From Auanema rhodensis (Eukaryota > Animalia > Nematoda): DNA of 64,000 bases. The stretch lies in NCBI GenBank assembly GCA_964057225.1, contig OZ059895.1, positions 11,904,001 to 11,968,000 on the forward strand, read 5' to 3'. The notes beneath the pieces were generated by a model. It did not search any database, was not told where the DNA came from, and saw only the letters and a program-made list of their open reading frames with translations. Positions 31,027 through 35,471 of the stretch are shown piece by piece. How positions within the stretch are numbered: position 1 is the stretch's first letter; the number at the start of each line of letters is the position of its first letter. The position numbers and the translations under genes were made by a program.

Positions 31027-31442
31027 TTTCAAATTTTTTTAACGATCATACCACGTTGAAAGTACGCCATGCAGCTGATTTTCAATTTTATCTCTTCCGT
31101 AACAAATGTTTTCAATTTTCCAGCAGTTTTACTTAGATAGCTCAACCCAAGGCATCAAAATATCTTCAATCTTATTTCTTTATTACAGTTATAAACCAGT
31201 AGTTTATGAACCTTCATCTTAACTTTACTGTTTCTATCTATTTCCTATTAAAACAAACGTTGTTTAAACACTATACAACTGTGAAACCTTTTTTAATTTA
31301 TTGTATTTGGAGCTCATAAGATTCAATATCATCGAGGGATTTAGATGTAACGTGGAAAATTACATAACTAACATGAAATTGGAAAAAAAACAATAACGAG
31401 GATAAATATGTAAATCATTGAATATCAGATATTTTCGCTTAC

Positions 31443-31451
31443 GACCATACC
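31443..31451 (+). repeat. Target site duplication, left copy (GACCATACC)
   Basis: Present once at this position in uninserted 5S genes and duplicated here on both sides of the element. A 10-bp reading (CGACCATACC) is possible, but 9 bp makes the TIRs equal in length. Confidence 0.92.
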
Positions 31452-31603
31452 GGCATTAATACATGTACGCATTTTTACATATACCTATTTAATACACACT
31501 ACATGGACACATTTTATTTCACATGTACGTAATATACGTGCGTATGTGTAGTATGTTTTTCACAAGTACCTATTTTTACATATTCAAACTTTCGACGGGT
31601 ACT
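31452..31603 (+). repeat. Left terminal inverted repeat (152 bp)
   Basis: GGCATTAATACATGTACGC...TTCGACGGGTACT is the reverse complement of 34796-34947, with 4 mismatches by eye (TIR positions 3, 4, 8 and one internal). Confidence 0.96.
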
Positions 31604-31625
31604 AAATTTTCTAATTTGTCATTTG

Positions 31626-31690
31626 AATTTCACATCACCACCCATGACGATAATTGCTTTTCTTATCGTTATGGGTGGTGATGTGAAATT
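31626..31690 (+). other. 65-nt hairpin (28-bp stem, 9-nt loop) between the left TIR and the transposase start
   Basis: AATTTCACATCACCACCCATGACGATAA-ttgcttttc-TTATCGTTATGGGTGGTGATGTGAAATT. The single mismatch is a G-U pair on the + strand. Confidence 0.9.
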
Positions 31691-31784
31691 TTTAGAGCAC
31701 TGTATGCGTGGTTTTCTCAAGGTAACTAGATATTATTTGTGGGTTTTAATTATTCTAATCTTAGATTTTGTGAGCTTGTTTTTA

Positions 31785-34724
31785 ATGAGACCCAACAGGA
31801 ACTTAACAGTGTTAGAAGCTCTTAATCTGTTGAAAAAATCAGAGTTAGTTCATTTTGAATTTTTAGTAAAGTACGTTGATACAGATCTGATGAACTGTCA
31901 GTAGTGGATTTTATGCCCGTGGTCGAGACAGTGGAGAAAGGATCATTCAATTATTTTCGTGATAAGAGCTCTGTTAATTTGGCTGATGTTTCAACAGATT
32001 GTTTCTCTCCTTGGTCAGGTTATGGTATAGAACGAAAAAGGTTTATCACGACAAACTTATTTATGTAGATAAGGATGGATGTCGTGTTACGGGTAATACG
32101 TATAAACGTTTTATTGAAGAAACAGAGGATGGTTACGTAGAATCTGCAGAAAATGTAGGATTAATTTTGAAAATAATGAGAAATCGACACCCTAATACTC
32201 AAGAATTTTATCGCGAGGTAGATTTTTCTTTTTTTATAAAAAATCTAAATGTTATAGATTTATTTCATTATGGATAATGGCACACTATGTTCGCACATAT
32301 TATATGCATATCGGGCTGGAGTAAGTGTGAATGATTTTTTTGTATAATTCGCTATTTAGTTCAATTTTGAACATTCATATTCACCTAAACCAATGCTTCC
32401 TTCTGAGGCTGCTGTGCTGAAAAATGCCCTTAATTATCGGTCTACAAAAGATGCTAAAACATTTCTGGCTGATCAAGGTATCCGAATCGACACCCAAAGA
32501 GTATTCAAGTTTTATATTTGCCTCTAGTAAAACTTTTATTTCAGTTAAGTAGCCTTAGTAGGTCCGTTCCATCTCATGTTAAAAGTCGTCAAGGCAGAAA
32601 AGCTCCACTCAATTTTCACAAACTAATGGATAGATTTATTGCAACGATTGATAATTCGGAGAAGTTGGAACAACCATTCATTGAAAAGCAGGGTAGCACA
32701 ATTTATCTATCTCGAATAAACATAATAACTTTCAGTTGATGGTGCGATTAATGTTCGGATTATGGTTTGTTATCCGATGGCGATTAAATGCTTCGCTACT
32801 AGCTTACCCACAATTGAAGATTTAAATGATCATAGAAGACATGTTGAGAATCTCTTGCACAAGCCAACTGATATTTTAAATGCTGAATTCAGTATTGAAA
32901 TGTAAGCTTAACAACTTTTATACAGTTTTATTTAGATAAATATCTGACTAGAGTGAATAGTAGTGGCAGTTTGCCACTAGTTGGGTCATGCCTGATGATA
33001 GATACAACATTTTCGTTAGCCAGTTCTGAATATGTCACTATTGTTTTAGGTGTTTCTGAAACGTTTTTGTACGTTATCAAAAATTAGACACACTTTAACA
33101 CTTATTTTAGAAGTTCTGTTTCTGGGAAGAATAGTAGCTTGCTTTTAGGGTTGATGATACATAGCAAGAAAAGTTTGGAGAATCATGAAGTCTTTTCTCA
33201 GTTTCTCAACAAGGTTTTTAATGAGTATTGCGCTGGGAAAACCATCGGTTTAATAGTACATGATGGGGAAGAGTCGTTTCGCGTTTATAATACTGTATAA
33301 ACTCATACATATTCGTTTTTGAGATATTGGTTTTAGGGGACGTTTTTCAAAAATGCCCTTCTTTTACGTTGCGATGTTCATCGCATTAACAATTTGAAAG
33401 AAGCGTGTGCTGGAGATCATAATGTTGACGAATTGAAAAAAATTATCTGGGGTGAAAAAATTAACGTATGTTTCTATTAGATTCTAAGTACTTTTTATAT
33501 TCATAATAGTTACTTGGCGCTACTGTCCTAAAAAAAGGAGTTGTACAAACTCTTCGAAGAAGTGAATATTCCGAAAAAATGATTCGATTAATATCTACTT
33601 TAGAAGAATGTAAATTGAAAAAATGGTGCTATTCAATAAAAAGATAAAAGTTTATTAATTTGTTTAGGCTAACTGATAACTTCGATGATCTTTTTGAGCA
33701 CAACAGCATGCTAACAAAATTGAAAGCGGGTTGGCCGGCCCAATACGTTAGCTCCAACATTATCGAAAGTAAAAACGCGCATATAAAGATGATTGTTAAC
33801 GCTCGGAAACCTGGTGGAAAACTAATGGATGATTTTTTGAATTTACACAAAAGTAGGTTTTTTTTTGCATTATTGTTTATAATATGTTTAACAGACGAAA
33901 TAAATGATTGTTTACGCTGTATATCCGGACAGACGTCTAGATATCAATCCAATCATTCTGTTTCTTTTGAAACATGGTCTACATTCTCAGCCGCTGAAAA
34001 GCGACACCATCTTTGGATATTTGGGCTAGAAGATTTGATGCCTGATGATGTTCTCGATTGTATTCCTAAGTGGCTAATTCCAGGTTTATAATTGAAAAAG
34101 TTCTATTTGTAATGAAACACTGCTTCAGATAAAAAAATTGATAGAGAAAACATACTCAGTGTACTTGCTAATCTGGATGTATTTCGTTTTCAAAATTTAA
34201 ATTTTGTGAAAAAAAAAGATGATCATAGGTTATATATATGTCAAACTGAATTACGATCTATAATACTATTGCTTTTTTAGTTGTTGTGTGGTTCATATCA
34301 AAGATGATAAACTATTTTGTGAGAATATAATGTGTAAGCGGAAAAAGAAATTTAAGCTGTGTGTTCATAAGTAAGTTAAAAATGTTTCAAAAATTATATA
34401 GTTGGTTTAGGATATCCGTAGTCGTGAAACTGTCTGAATTAGAGAGAGCATCAGTTATATCGGTTCTTGAGAAAAAAAAAGATGAAATAACATGTTCAAC
34501 ATTACTGAGAGAGCAAGCAAGGCCAGAACATGGCACAAAATATGTTCGAAGAAAAGGACATCAGTTCAGCAAGCACAACGGGACGAGAAATTACATGGGT
34601 CTCTTGGAGTACAGAAATATAAGCTTATCTTTCATGCAGTATATTTTTTATTTTCAGCACAACCACGTCCTCGCTAGACTTATCAGAAATAAGCACAGAA
34701 AGTTCGATTGAATTGAAATCTTGA
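31785..34724 (+). CDS. MULE/Mutator-family DDE transposase with SWIM-like zinc finger, ~746 aa, 17 exons (alternative in-frame start at 31704)
   Basis: Predicted GT-AG introns: 31844-31884, 32019-32068, 32218-32257, 32321-32359, 32501-32544, 32693-32735, 32892-32935, 33069-33110, 33295-33336, 33466-33509, 33626-33667, 33853-33894, 34084-34128, 34229-34280, 34371-34410, 34609-34657. Removing them leaves 2241 nt with no internal stop. Motifs: LMIDTTF (D at 33001), LIVHDGEE (D at 33262), LLRCDVH (CxxH, 33370-33381), SSNIIESKNAHIK (E at 33765), CENIMC-x8-CVH (34318-34368). The listed + strand ORFs at 31623, 31999, 32518, 33660 and 34361 overlap exons of this gene. Confidence 0.88.
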
Positions 34725-34795
34725 ATCTATATAAACTTGTTTCTAATTTTACTTCTTCATTTTGAAAGCAAACCACCAACAACGAAAATGAAATA

Positions 34796-34947
34796 AGTAC
34801 CCGTCGAAAGTTTGAATATGTAAAAATAGGTACTTGTGAAAAACATACTACACATACGCATGTATATTACGTACATGTGAAATAAAATGTGTCCATGTAG
34901 TGTGTATTAAATAGGTATATGTAAAAATGCGTACATGTAATAAGTCC
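34796..34947 (-). repeat. Right terminal inverted repeat (152 bp)
   Basis: AGTACCCGTCGAA...GCGTACATGTAATAAGTCC, the reverse complement of the left TIR. Confidence 0.96.
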
Positions 34948-34956
34948 GACCATACC
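34948..34956 (+). repeat. Target site duplication, right copy (GACCATACC)
   Basis: Identical to 31443-31451. Confidence 0.92.
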
Positions 34957-35471
34957 ACGTTGAAAGAACGCCATCCCGTCCGATCTGGCAAGTCAAGCAA
35001 CGTTGGGCCCGGTTAGTACTTGGATCGGAGACAGCTTGGGAATCCCGGGTGCCGTAAGCTTTTCAAATTTTTTTAACGATCATACCACGTTGAAAGTACG
35101 CCATGCAGCTGATTTTCAATTTTATCTCTTCCGTAACAAATGTTTTCAATTTTCCAGCAGTTTTACTTAGATAGCTCAACCCAAGCCATTGAAATATCTT
35201 CAATCTTATTTCTATATTACAGTTATAAACCAGTAGTTTATGAACCTTCATCTTAACTTTACTGTTTCTATCTATTTCCTATTGAAACAAACATTGTTTA
35301 AACACTATACAACTGTGAAACCTTTTTTAATTTATTGTATTTGGATCTCATAAGATTTGATATCATCGAGGGATTTAGATGTTACGTAGAAAAGTACATA
35401 ACTAACATGAAATTTGGAAAAAAAACAATAACGAGGATAAGTATGTAAATCATTGAATATCAGATATTTTC

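What the first reader, a model, noticed from the sequence alone, without database searches (positions are those of the whole stretch)
31437..35060. Intact Mutator-like transposon inserted at nt 7-15 of a canonical 5S rRNA gene: candidate 5S / Pol III gene-targeting DNA transposon
Seen: the only non-array DNA in 64 kb is a TIR element whose 9-bp TSD is 5S nt 7-15, with the transposase in the same orientation as 5S. It hit one of only 14 canonical-class genes, although about 100 truncated heads and 25 variant genes carry the same 9-mer and the spacers offer far more DNA. Known: RNA-gene targeting is described for R2 and Pokey (28S), Dada (U1/U6/tRNA) and the Mutsu non-LTR element (5S). MULEs are generally not regarded as rDNA-specific, and I do not know of a 5S-targeting MULE. 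Inference: the element may be directed to transcribed or TFIIIA-bound 5S genes or to their open chromatin. This is a single insertion, so chance cannot be excluded.
Basis: partly seen in the sequence, partly recalled or inferred. Interest (0 to 1): 0.85.

Follow-up and report, generated by a model that had tools for sequence, protein, structure and literature searches.

The report
Mutator-like transposons targeting Pol III genes
The element that interrupts this 5S rRNA gene is an apparently intact cut-and-paste transposon from a nematode group of very divergent Mutator-like elements, and every member of that group I could map lies inside or at the start of a 5S or tRNA gene, a habit published for DNA transposons only in the unrelated Dada group.

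Summary
A 3,496-bp element (31452-34947) has 157-nt inverted ends and a perfect 9-bp duplication, GACCATACC, which is 5S nt 7-15. It is the only non-array DNA in the window.

The targeting idea also holds, and it is not limited to 5S. The family's only other end in the 181-Mb genome abuts nt 1 of a tRNA-His gene. Twelve related families or subfamilies gave 25 more junctions, 27 in all. All 27 lie inside, or at most 9 bp upstream of, a 5S or tRNA gene (His, Gln, Ile, Asp, Gly, Arg, Trp, Leu). Six complete copies have perfect 9-bp duplications, all different.

Sites cluster at the gene start (-9 to +20) and mid-gene. One family can hit unrelated genes with no shared sequence. Four of four informative 5S insertions are in full-length genes, not in the commoner truncated heads that share the same local sequence. 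I infer that the element recognises the assembled Pol III gene, much as Ty3 does, not a DNA word as Dada does.

The ends, the duplication length, the catalytic motifs and Atlas similarity all point to Mutator. Pfam's MULE model does not reach threshold.

Other notes of this scan report the same habit on other DNA of this genome. I found no published report.

The parts
31437..31451 (+). 5' stub of the interrupted 5S gene (nt 1-15), preceded by the normal array spacer
   Evidence: Sequence. Aligned to an intact 5S copy as -12..+15.
31443..31451 (.). Left copy of the 9-bp target site duplication GACCATACC (5S nt 7-15)
   Evidence: identical to 34948-34956.
31452..31608 (+). Left terminal inverted repeat, 157 nt, with tip GGCATTAATACATGTACGC
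   Evidence: Its first 141 nt are 100% identical to the solo TIR at G000:C5:10172278-10172418.
31626..31690 (.). Sub-terminal hairpin just inside the left TIR, with 28-nt arms (96%) and a 9-nt loop. Its role is unknown.
   Evidence: inverted repeat I2.
31785..34711 (+). Multi-exon transposase gene. The start is not fixed (ATG at 31785 or 31913) and the stop is at 34709-34711. Every exon that matches the Auanema homologue is open.
   Evidence: Open-frame pieces. A local tblastn of P0001 against the element covers aa 51-626 in order (E 1e-85).
32899..33084 (+). Open frame piece holding the first catalytic Asp (..SCLMIDTTFSLASSEYVTIVLG)
   Evidence: The residue is invariant in alignment A2 (D303 of P0001).
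33088..33297 (+). Open frame piece holding the second catalytic Asp (..GLIVHDGEESF)
   Evidence: D376/G377/E378 of P0001 are invariant.
33337..33477 (+). Open frame piece holding the CxxH motif (LLRCDVHRINN)
   Evidence: R397, C398, H401 and N405 of P0001 are invariant.
33648..34088 (+). Open frame piece holding the catalytic Glu signature (SSNIIESKNAHIK). I used it as the query for the related families.
   Evidence: N, E, N and K are invariant in both A1 and A2.
34791..34947 (-). Right terminal inverted repeat, with tip (reverse complement) GGACTTATTACATGTACGC
   Evidence: The TIRs are about 97% identical, and most differences lie in the first 9 nt.
34948..34956 (.). Right copy of the TSD GACCATACC
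34948..35060 (+). Remainder of the interrupted 5S gene (nt 7-119). Rfam calls 34942-35060 a full 5S at 84 bits because it aligns the element's last 6 nt (AAGTCC) in place of nt 1-6.

Best explanation
The insert is an apparently autonomous, recently mobile member of a nematode clade of very divergent Mutator-superfamily (MULE-like) transposons. They move by cut and paste, make 9-bp duplications, carry 100-470-nt inverted ends that begin GGC/GGT, and encode a multi-exon DDE transposase with a CxxH motif. [quoted passage not shown] Shown here: every resolvable junction lies within a 5S or tRNA gene or at most 9 bp upstream of it. Most cluster at the gene's 5' boundary, and a second group lies mid-gene. 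Inferred: the cue is the assembled Pol III gene, most likely through a protein tether to TFIIIC, TFIIIB or Pol III, and not a DNA word. I infer this because one family can hit unrelated genes whose target sequences share nothing, and because full-length 5S genes are hit but sequence-identical truncated heads are not. The large tandem 5S and tRNA arrays of this genome then act as safe landing sites. Many insertions near position +1 leave a complete gene copy downstream, because the duplication restores its first bases.
For: Anatomy of the window element. Second family-A junction, a solo TIR 100% identical over 141 nt that abuts nt 1 of the first tRNA-His of an array of at least 27 copies on another contig. 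The exon holding the catalytic Glu finds 51 related matches in the genome. Rfam and ARAGORN put most of their loci beside 5S or tRNA genes. Six complete copies have perfect but different 9-bp TSDs: 5S 7-15, tRNA-Gln 3-11, tRNA-His -4..+5, tRNA-Ile -5..+4, tRNA-Gly-GCC 2-10 and 5S -1..+8. One-sided junctions: tRNA-His at -9, -6, -2 and +1; Arg +4; Asp +5; Trp +7; 5S at +2, +4, +9, +20, +67, +72 and +79; Arg +30 (two loci) and +42; Gly-TCC +39; Leu +52; Gln near +38/39 (two, approximate). Targets differ within a family: A hits 5S and His; B hits Gln and 5S; C hits His, Ile and Asp; D hits Gly and 5S; H hits 5S and His twice; G hits 5S, Arg, Gln, Gly and Leu. Their TSDs share no motif. Heads and genes share -40..+33, yet the four informative 5'-end 5S insertions (A1, D2, E1, K) are all in full-length genes; (39/129)^4 = 0.008 at this window's ratio. 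Genes make up only 7.7% of this array (39 x 119 bp of about 60.5 kb). Superfamily: the Auanema homologue P0001 (E 1e-33) has MULE/SWIM clusters as nearest ESM Atlas neighbours by features (0.95, 179 shared) and by structure. A distant Caenorhabditis briggsae relative (P0014) also has GGC tips and a 9-bp TSD, AAAATTTTT, but lies in ordinary AT-rich DNA. That suggests targeting arose within the lineage.
Against: There is no experimental or de novo insertion data. All sites are fixed copies in one assembly, so selection and array dynamics have filtered them. The catalogue therefore covers only the loci already fetched, and several loci did not reach an element end. Insertion positions range from -9 to +79, which is looser than Ty3's narrow window. 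No targeting domain or host partner has been identified. Pfam's MULE model does not detect the protein and my AlphaFold model was unusable, so the superfamily call is indirect. Weak family-specific sequence preferences cannot be excluded with 2-8 sites per family. The gene-versus-head test rests on four events and assumes a similar head-to-gene ratio in the other arrays.
Confidence: 0.65

Rival explanations
1. Sequence-specific targeting as in Dada. Each family's transposase reads a particular DNA word that happens to lie in multicopy RNA genes.
For: Dada families also concentrate near the A box or acceptor boundary and near the anticodon, and some hit several tRNA types (PMC8869645). Within family C the His and Ile sites both lie at -4/-5 and share ATAT..G..CCA loosely. 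Family G hit tRNA-Arg nt 30-38 twice.
Against: The TSDs and flanks of one family share no motif. Examples are GACCATACC in 5S against GCCCAAGTA in His for family A; tRNA-Gln nt 3-11 against 5S nt 79 onward for B; and six unrelated sites for G. The 90 truncated 5S heads carry the same -40..+33 sequence as the genes, yet all four informative insertions are in full-length genes.
Confidence: 0.12
2. No protein tether. The transposase simply prefers accessible, nucleosome-free or melted DNA, and active Pol III genes are the most extreme such DNA in this genome.
For: The spread of positions from -9 to +79 across gene bodies is broader than expected for a rigid tether. From my own knowledge, plant Mu elements favour open chromatin at the 5' ends of genes.
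Against: No copy was seen at Pol II promoters or other open regions among 27 junctions. Spacers next to the genes were not hit. Sites form two clusters and are not spread evenly over the gene.
Confidence: 0.15
3. Chance or survivorship. Insertion is random and only copies in harmless multicopy arrays persist, or the 5S-linked copies all descend from one insertion spread by array duplication.
For: The window holds a single insertion. Some copies were clearly amplified along with their arrays: three 4,005-bp units with tRNA-Arg and repeated copies in the tRNA-Leu array.
Against: After counting amplified copies once, 27 junctions remain, with different TSDs, genes and contigs. Array spacers are 2-10 times larger than the genes and equally harmless, yet none of the junctions lies in a spacer more than 9 bp from a gene. 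Even if genes made up 35% of array DNA, 25 of 25 would have a probability of about 4e-12.
Confidence: 0.03
4. The element is not a Mutator relative. It is a Dada member or a separate, unnamed DDE superfamily.
For: Pfam PF10551 and PF00872 give no hit even on full-length homologues. Only 15 relatives were found among 1.84 billion representatives. Dada is itself distantly related to MuDR and shares the target class (PMC3706591).
Against: The 9-bp TSD, long TIRs and CxxH motif contrast with Dada's 6-7-bp TSD, absence of TIRs and DxxH motif. Atlas neighbours by features and by structure are overwhelmingly MULE/SWIM clusters.
Confidence: 0.1

Closest known systems
Dada superfamily (Kojima & Jurka 2013, PMC3706591; Kojima 2022, PMC8869645)
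   Same: Both are DDE cut-and-paste transposons with intron-bearing genes. Both are found almost only inside multicopy small-RNA genes, including tRNA and 5S, in genomes with very many such genes. Both show hot regions near the tRNA 5' part or A box and near the anticodon. In both, the flanks sometimes do not come from one gene.
   Different: Dada makes 6-7-bp TSDs, has no TIRs (only short sub-terminal repeats), carries a DxxH motif and is 4.7-11 kb long (one transposase is given as 1,402 aa). It inserts at one fixed, sequence-defined site per lineage; fish Dada-5S targets ATTCCCAGGCGGTC. Neither Dada paper names a nematode host. The element here has a 9-bp TSD, 95-470-nt TIRs, a CxxH motif and a length of about 3.4-3.8 kb. 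One family can have several genes and positions as targets.
Mutator / MULE superfamily (MuDR; Hop and Mutyl as described in PMC5014426)
   Same: It shares the 9-bp TSD, the long TIRs, the DDE transposase with CxxH and the TN..ES.N...K signature, and a Cys/His cluster towards the C terminus. Its nearest Atlas clusters carry PF10551 and SWIM domains.
   Different: I found no report of a MULE aimed at Pol III genes. The protein is so divergent that Pfam's MULE model misses it.
Ty3 LTR retrotransposon of budding yeast (PMC5911963, PMC6673722, bioRxiv 10.1101/2021.07.27.453949)
   Same: It works in a similar way. Integration occurs at the start of Pol III genes of any type (tRNA, 5S), independent of sequence. 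Ty3's integration there is tied to the Pol III machinery: the titles and abstracts I saw place it at the Pol III transcription start site, and from my own knowledge the partner is TFIIIB. That is the model I infer here.
   Different: Ty3 is a retroelement with an integrase and uses a very narrow window at the start site. Here the element is a DNA transposon, the window is wider, and a second cluster lies mid-gene. No host partner has been shown.
Dictyostelium TRE5-A, TRE3, DGLT-A and yeast Ty1 (PMC5911963, PMC6101501)
   Same: All use Pol III genes as safe havens through host-factor recognition.
   Different: Those are retroelements that land tens of bp upstream or downstream of the gene, not inside it.
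Pokey (piggyBac, 28S rDNA; PMC4912750) and Mutsu (non-LTR, 5S; cited in PMC3706591)
   Same: Both are transposons that live in rRNA gene arrays.
   Different: Pokey and Mutsu belong to other element classes. [quoted passage not shown] Mutsu is a 5S-specific non-LTR retrotransposon.

Membership tests
Mutator/MULE superfamily | Target site duplication of 9 bp, sometimes up to 11 bp | tested here: met
   Six complete copies from five families each have a perfect 9-bp TSD. The C. briggsae relative also has one.
Mutator/MULE superfamily | Long terminal inverted repeats, typically about 100 bp or more | tested here: met
   The window element has a 157-nt TIR. Related families have TIRs of 95-470 nt, and the Auanema contig has 146 nt.
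Mutator/MULE superfamily | MURA-type DDE transposase with a C/DxxH motif after the second Asp and the (T/S)N..E..N...K signature around the Glu | tested here: met
   The motifs LMIDTTF, IVHDGEES, RCDVH..N and SSNIIESKNAHIK are present. They are invariant across A1 and A2. That these motifs define the signature is from my own knowledge.
Mutator/MULE superfamily | Significant match to Pfam PF10551 (MULE) or PF00872 (Transposase_mut) | tested here: not met
   There was no hit at E <= 10 on the exon pieces and none at E <= 0.1 on the full-length homologues P0001, P0008, P0013 and P0014. The only match was a weak DUF7747 hit.
Mutator/MULE superfamily | Overall similarity of the transposase to recognised MULE proteins | tested here: inconclusive
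   The ESM Atlas gives a best feature hit of 0.95 with 179 shared features, and 9 of the 10 best hits that carry a family are in the MULE clan. The best structure row has TM 0.83 by that row, over 269 residues. These results carry no alignment or E-value. My own AlphaFold model was too poor to use (pLDDT 36), and the PDB sequence search was blank.
Mutator/MULE superfamily | C-terminal SWIM-type zinc finger (CxCxnCxH) | tested here: inconclusive
   A Cys/His cluster is present (CCVVH..C..C..CVH in 34264-34371; C..C..C.H in P0008). Pfam SWIM does not detect it.
Dada superfamily | 6-7-bp TSD | tested here: not met
   All six complete copies have 9-bp TSDs. The Dada value is from PMC3706591.
Dada superfamily | No terminal inverted repeats, only short sub-terminal ones | tested here: not met
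   The TIRs here are 95-470 nt.
Dada superfamily | DxxH motif after the second Asp, plus N-terminal CCCC and C-terminal CCHC zinc fingers | tested here: not met
   The motif here is CxxH (RCDVH; C398..H401 invariant). I did not assess the zinc fingers. I did not run a direct alignment to Dada proteins because no Dada sequence was available by reference.
Dada superfamily | Insertion at one fixed, sequence-defined site of a multicopy small-RNA gene | tested here: not met
   The target class matches (5S, tRNA). However, families A, B, C, D, G and H each use different genes or positions with no shared sequence.
Pol III start-site integrators of the Ty3 type (mode of action only, not ancestry) | Integration at the 5' boundary of Pol III genes of different types, independent of sequence | tested here: met
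   17 of 27 junctions have TSDs that start between -9 and +20 of 5S or of seven tRNA species.
Pol III start-site integrators of the Ty3 type (mode of action only, not ancestry) | Dependence on a Pol III transcription factor (TFIIIB for Ty3) | not testable with these tools
   The only indirect evidence is that full-length 5S genes are hit and promoter-less heads with the same local sequence are not.

The most novel reading that the evidence does not exclude
A lineage of Mutator-superfamily DNA transposases has evolved to read the assembled RNA polymerase III transcription complex and not DNA sequence. As a result it pastes itself into the first bases, or in one subclade the middle, of any 5S or tRNA gene. 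This would be the first DNA-transposon counterpart of Ty3-style Pol III tethering, arising independently of Dada, and a compact (~3.5 kb) natural system for factor-guided safe-site integration in an animal.
Probability: 0.5. Interest if true: 0.9.

Novelty: new variant of a known kind. Interest (0 to 1): 0.8.

Why it matters
Integration guided to Pol III genes is a classic case of how mobile DNA avoids harming its host. It has been worked out mechanistically only for retroelements of yeasts and slime moulds. Among DNA transposons only Dada is described, and Dada is thought to read DNA sequence. A Mutator-type clade in an animal that lands in 5S and tRNA genes of many kinds would add a third, independent origin of this strategy. 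It would extend the strategy to the best-studied plant transposon superfamily. It would also offer a small, intact element with its own outgroup, the non-targeting Caenorhabditis relatives, for finding the targeting domain and its host partner. Such a system bears on targeted gene delivery and on how very large tRNA and 5S arrays and their parasites evolve together.

Tried and rejected
- **Pfam on ten exon-sized pieces** and on full-length homologues: no transposase family, only weak DUF7747.
- **PDB sequence search with profile A2**: nothing relevant.
- **AlphaFold2 of P0001 with a 4-sequence alignment**: mean pLDDT 36. The model was unusable, so I ran no fold search.
- **The search for homologous proteins with P0001 and with profile A2**: only P0001 itself came back, from Auanema sp. 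JU1783.
- **A TIR search for family C**: I gave the wrong coordinates by mistake. It hit the tRNA-His array spacer instead and returned no loci. It only shows that the His array spans C5:10.19-10.23, 10.46-10.48 and 10.70 Mb.
I therefore have no read-level evidence on polymorphism, excision or expression. Afterwards I sent no DNA of those places to any search tool. Local scripts only compared junction flanks with a 5S copy already held.
- **Contigs from other samples or species that carry relatives**: these contigs either end at the element tips or show no recognisable ends or RNA genes, so they give no target information.
- **C. nigoni and one C. briggsae relative** (L081, L087): no TIRs found and no tRNA gene nearby (no Rfam match either in L081). 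These may be domesticated or decayed copies.
- **The idea that all copies sit strictly at the start site:** rejected. Families G, B-like, I and J have sites from +20 to +79.
- **The idea that TFIIIA is the cue:** rejected, because tRNA genes do not use TFIIIA.
- **Joined spliced protein model:** Exons were searched apart, by reference.

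
Full report
**What is in the window.** The window (G000:C3:11904001-11968000; genome 181 Mb in 112 contigs) is a one-strand tandem array of nematode-type 5S rRNA genes. Rfam finds 39 genes. By sequence, 14 are of one class and 25 of a variant class. Between them lie 90 truncated heads, which are 5S nt 1-33 joined to spacer. 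The heads share the 40 bp upstream with the full genes. A k-mer scan shows a single stretch of non-array DNA, 31398-34986.

That stretch is a 3,496-bp element, 31452-34947. It has 157-nt terminal inverted repeats about 97% identical. It is flanked by a perfect 9-bp duplication, GACCATACC, at 31443-31451 and 34948-34956. Alignment to an intact copy places the duplication at 5S nt 7-15.

**The gene.** The + strand carries a multi-exon gene, from about 31785 or 31913 to 34711. The open-frame pieces hold LMIDTTF, IVHDGEES, RCDVH and SSNIIESKNAHIK, which form a D, D, CxxH, E arrangement. A profile of the Glu-bearing exon, built from eight copies in this genome (A1), found only 15 relatives among 1.84 billion representative proteins. 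The best is P0001, a 629-aa unnamed protein of Auanema sp. JU1783. A local tblastn of P0001 against the element aligns aa 51-626 in order, exon by exon, with no break inside matching exons (E 1e-85). The gene therefore looks intact.

The Auanema contig is the element alone, with 146-nt TIRs and GGT/GGC tips.

**Which superfamily.** Pfam does not recognise the protein. It found no family on the exon pieces or on the full-length homologues, apart from a weak DUF7747 match. A PDB sequence search was blank and my AlphaFold model was too poor to use (pLDDT 36). The ESM Atlas, which holds P0001, gives mostly MULE/SWIM clusters as nearest neighbours. By features the best score is 0.95 with 179 shared features. 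By structure the best row has TM 0.83 by that row, over 269 residues.

Taken with the 9-bp TSD, the long TIRs and the CxxH motif, this supports a very divergent Mutator-superfamily element. Dada is excluded on structure. It makes 6-7-bp TSDs, has no TIRs and carries DxxH (PMC3706591).

- *Family A.* The TIR of the window element occurs at only one other place in the genome, C5:10172278-10172418, and is 100% identical over 141 nt. Its tip abuts nt 1 of a tRNA-His gene, the first of an array of at least 27 copies. Older fragments at 89-94% identity lie at C3:10.14 Mb, among 5S-array remnants.
- *Related families.* The Glu exon finds 51 related matches at 25-59% identity, and an N-terminal exon finds 44. 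I merged the loci and annotated them with ARAGORN, a local 5S comparison and inverted-repeat searches.

**Junction catalogue.** Six complete copies have perfect but different 9-bp TSDs:

| Copy | Target | TSD position |
|---|---|---|
| A1 | 5S | 7-15 |
| B1 | tRNA-Gln-CTG | 3-11 |
| C1 | tRNA-His | -4..+5 |
| C2 | tRNA-Ile-TAT | -5..+4 |
| D1 | tRNA-Gly-GCC | 2-10 |
| E1 | 5S | -1..+8 |

One-sided junctions were placed by alignment to intact genes:

| Region | Target | Junction position (family) |
|---|---|---|
| Gene start | tRNA-His | -9 (H), -6 (L), -2 (H), +1 (A) |
| Gene start | tRNA-Arg-ACG | +4 (F) |
| Gene start | tRNA-Asp | +5 (C) |
| Gene start | tRNA-Trp | +7 (I) |
| Gene start | 5S | +2 (K), +4 (D), +9 (H), +20 (J) |
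| Mid-gene | 5S | +67 (G), +72 (G), +79 (B-like) |
| Mid-gene | tRNA-Arg | +30 at two loci (G), +42 (G) |
| Mid-gene | tRNA-Gly-TCC | +39 (G) |
| Mid-gene | tRNA-Leu | +52 (G) |
| Mid-gene | tRNA-Gln | near +38/39 (G and I, approximate) |

Copies that were amplified together with their arrays were counted once. These are three 4,005-bp units with tRNA-Arg, a 20-kb duplicate, and repeated copies in the tRNA-Leu array. That leaves 27 junctions from 13 families or subfamilies. All lie inside, or at most 9 bp upstream of, a Pol III gene. Array spacers are several times larger than the genes; in this window the genes are 7.7% of the array. Chance, survivorship and spread from a single insertion are therefore excluded. 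The tips share a consensus: GGC (or GGT/GGA), then N-TT, then ..AC.

**How it probably works.** Two patterns argue against a DNA word as the cue.

- One family can use unrelated genes and positions: A uses 5S and His; B uses Gln and 5S; C uses His, Ile and Asp; D uses Gly and 5S; H uses 5S and His; G uses 5S, Arg, Gln, Gly and Leu. Their TSDs share nothing.
- The four 5'-end 5S insertions for which the gene body can be seen (A1, D2, E1, K) are all in full-length genes. Truncated heads with identical sequence from -40 to +33 outnumber genes 90 to 39 in this window, so (39/129)^4 = 0.008. The heads lack the internal promoter.

I therefore infer that the transposase recognises the assembled Pol III gene. 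Because tRNA genes are hit, the common cue cannot be TFIIIA. TFIIIC, TFIIIB or Pol III itself are the candidates. This is the logic of Ty3 at Pol III start sites (PMC5911963, PMC6673722). It differs from Dada, which is thought to read primary sequence (PMC8869645). It is an inference. The spread of positions (-9 to +79) is wider than Ty3's window, and a preference for accessible or melted DNA without any tether remains possible.

Orientation relative to the target is uniform within families C (opposite, three cases) and H (same, three cases) but mixed in A. Many insertions near +1 leave a complete gene downstream, because the duplication restores its first bases.

**Evolution.** Distant relatives in Caenorhabditis, at about 25% identity, include a C. 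briggsae element that encodes CBG00011. It has 319-nt TIRs, GGC tips and a 9-bp TSD, AAAATTTTT, and lies in ordinary AT-rich DNA with no tRNA gene within 6 kb. Two others lack recognisable ends. This suggests that Pol III targeting arose inside the lineage.

**Literature and earlier notes.** Full-text searches found Dada as the only DNA-transposon group described as aimed at small-RNA genes. They found no report of a Mutator-type element with this habit. Other notes of this same scan already describe the phenomenon on other DNA of this genome (s1-401422, s1-409933, s1-387507, s1-409977). My copy D2 is the palindromic 5S case of s1-409977. I treated these notes as leads only.

**Limits.**
I sent no DNA of those places to any search tool afterwards. 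I have no read-level evidence on expression, polymorphism or excision.
- Eight DNA runs in two studies (two organism labels) hold about half or more of the element's words, and a ninth run of a third organism label and study holds 0.21. No RNA holder is on record.

Noticed in passing
window 31626-31690: A near-perfect hairpin (28-nt arms, 9-nt loop) lies just inside the left TIR, upstream of the transposase gene. Its role is unknown; it could be a regulatory site or a small nested palindrome.
   Followed up: no
window 34942-35060: Rfam scores the interrupted gene as a full-length 5S (84 bits), aligning the element's last six bases (AAGTCC) in place of 5S nt 1-6. The internal promoter is intact, so a 5S-like RNA with a foreign 5' end might still be made.
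   Followed up: partly
window, whole array: The array is built mostly of 399-bp units carrying only a truncated 5S head (nt 1-33), 90 in all. They are interspersed with 529-bp units carrying full genes (39, in two sequence classes). The heads keep the upstream region but lack the internal promoter.
   Followed up: partly
G000:C3:12610765-12615170 (L054/L009/L030): A family-D copy has both ends of the left type (tip GGCC). Each end is joined to 5S nt 4 with the 5S genes facing outward, forming an inverted repeat of at least 651 bp at 99.4%. This is a palindromic arrangement, not a simple insertion. A similar mirror arrangement flanks a family-G copy with tRNA-Arg halves at C7:9582998-9587557.
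   Followed up: partly
G000:C7:10175377-10187951 (L061, L025, L065, L026, L066, L027): A family-F element and the tRNA-Arg-ACG it abuts have been amplified together as at least three tandem 4,005-bp units. No left TIR is detectable.
   Followed up: partly
G000:C7:15.99-16.08 Mb (L040, L042-L046): Truncated family-G copies of about 1.6 kb sit repeatedly inside a dense tRNA-Leu (AAG/TAG) array with a 177-bp period. They were apparently amplified and inverted together with the array.
   Followed up: no
G000:C5:10.19-10.23, 10.46-10.48 and 10.70 Mb: There are very large tandem arrays of tRNA-His-GTG genes with periods of about 207 and 332 bp. They came up in a mis-aimed search. This genome carries tRNA genes in zebrafish-like array numbers.
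   Followed up: no
L088:4583-9839 (Caenorhabditis briggsae FR847114.2): The gene CBG00011 lies in a roughly 5.3-kb element with 319-nt TIRs made of GGGGGTACAA sub-repeats, GGC tips and a 9-bp TSD, AAAATTTTT. This is a non-targeting relative that could serve as an outgroup.
   Followed up: partly
L015:4780-5480 and G000:C3:10136953-10149481: An orphan, degenerate 5S unit and rearranged fragments of the window's element (89-94% identity, partly as an inverted duplication) lie about 1.8 Mb upstream of the window, among 5S-head remnants. This looks like an old, decayed piece of array with an old copy.
   Followed up: partly
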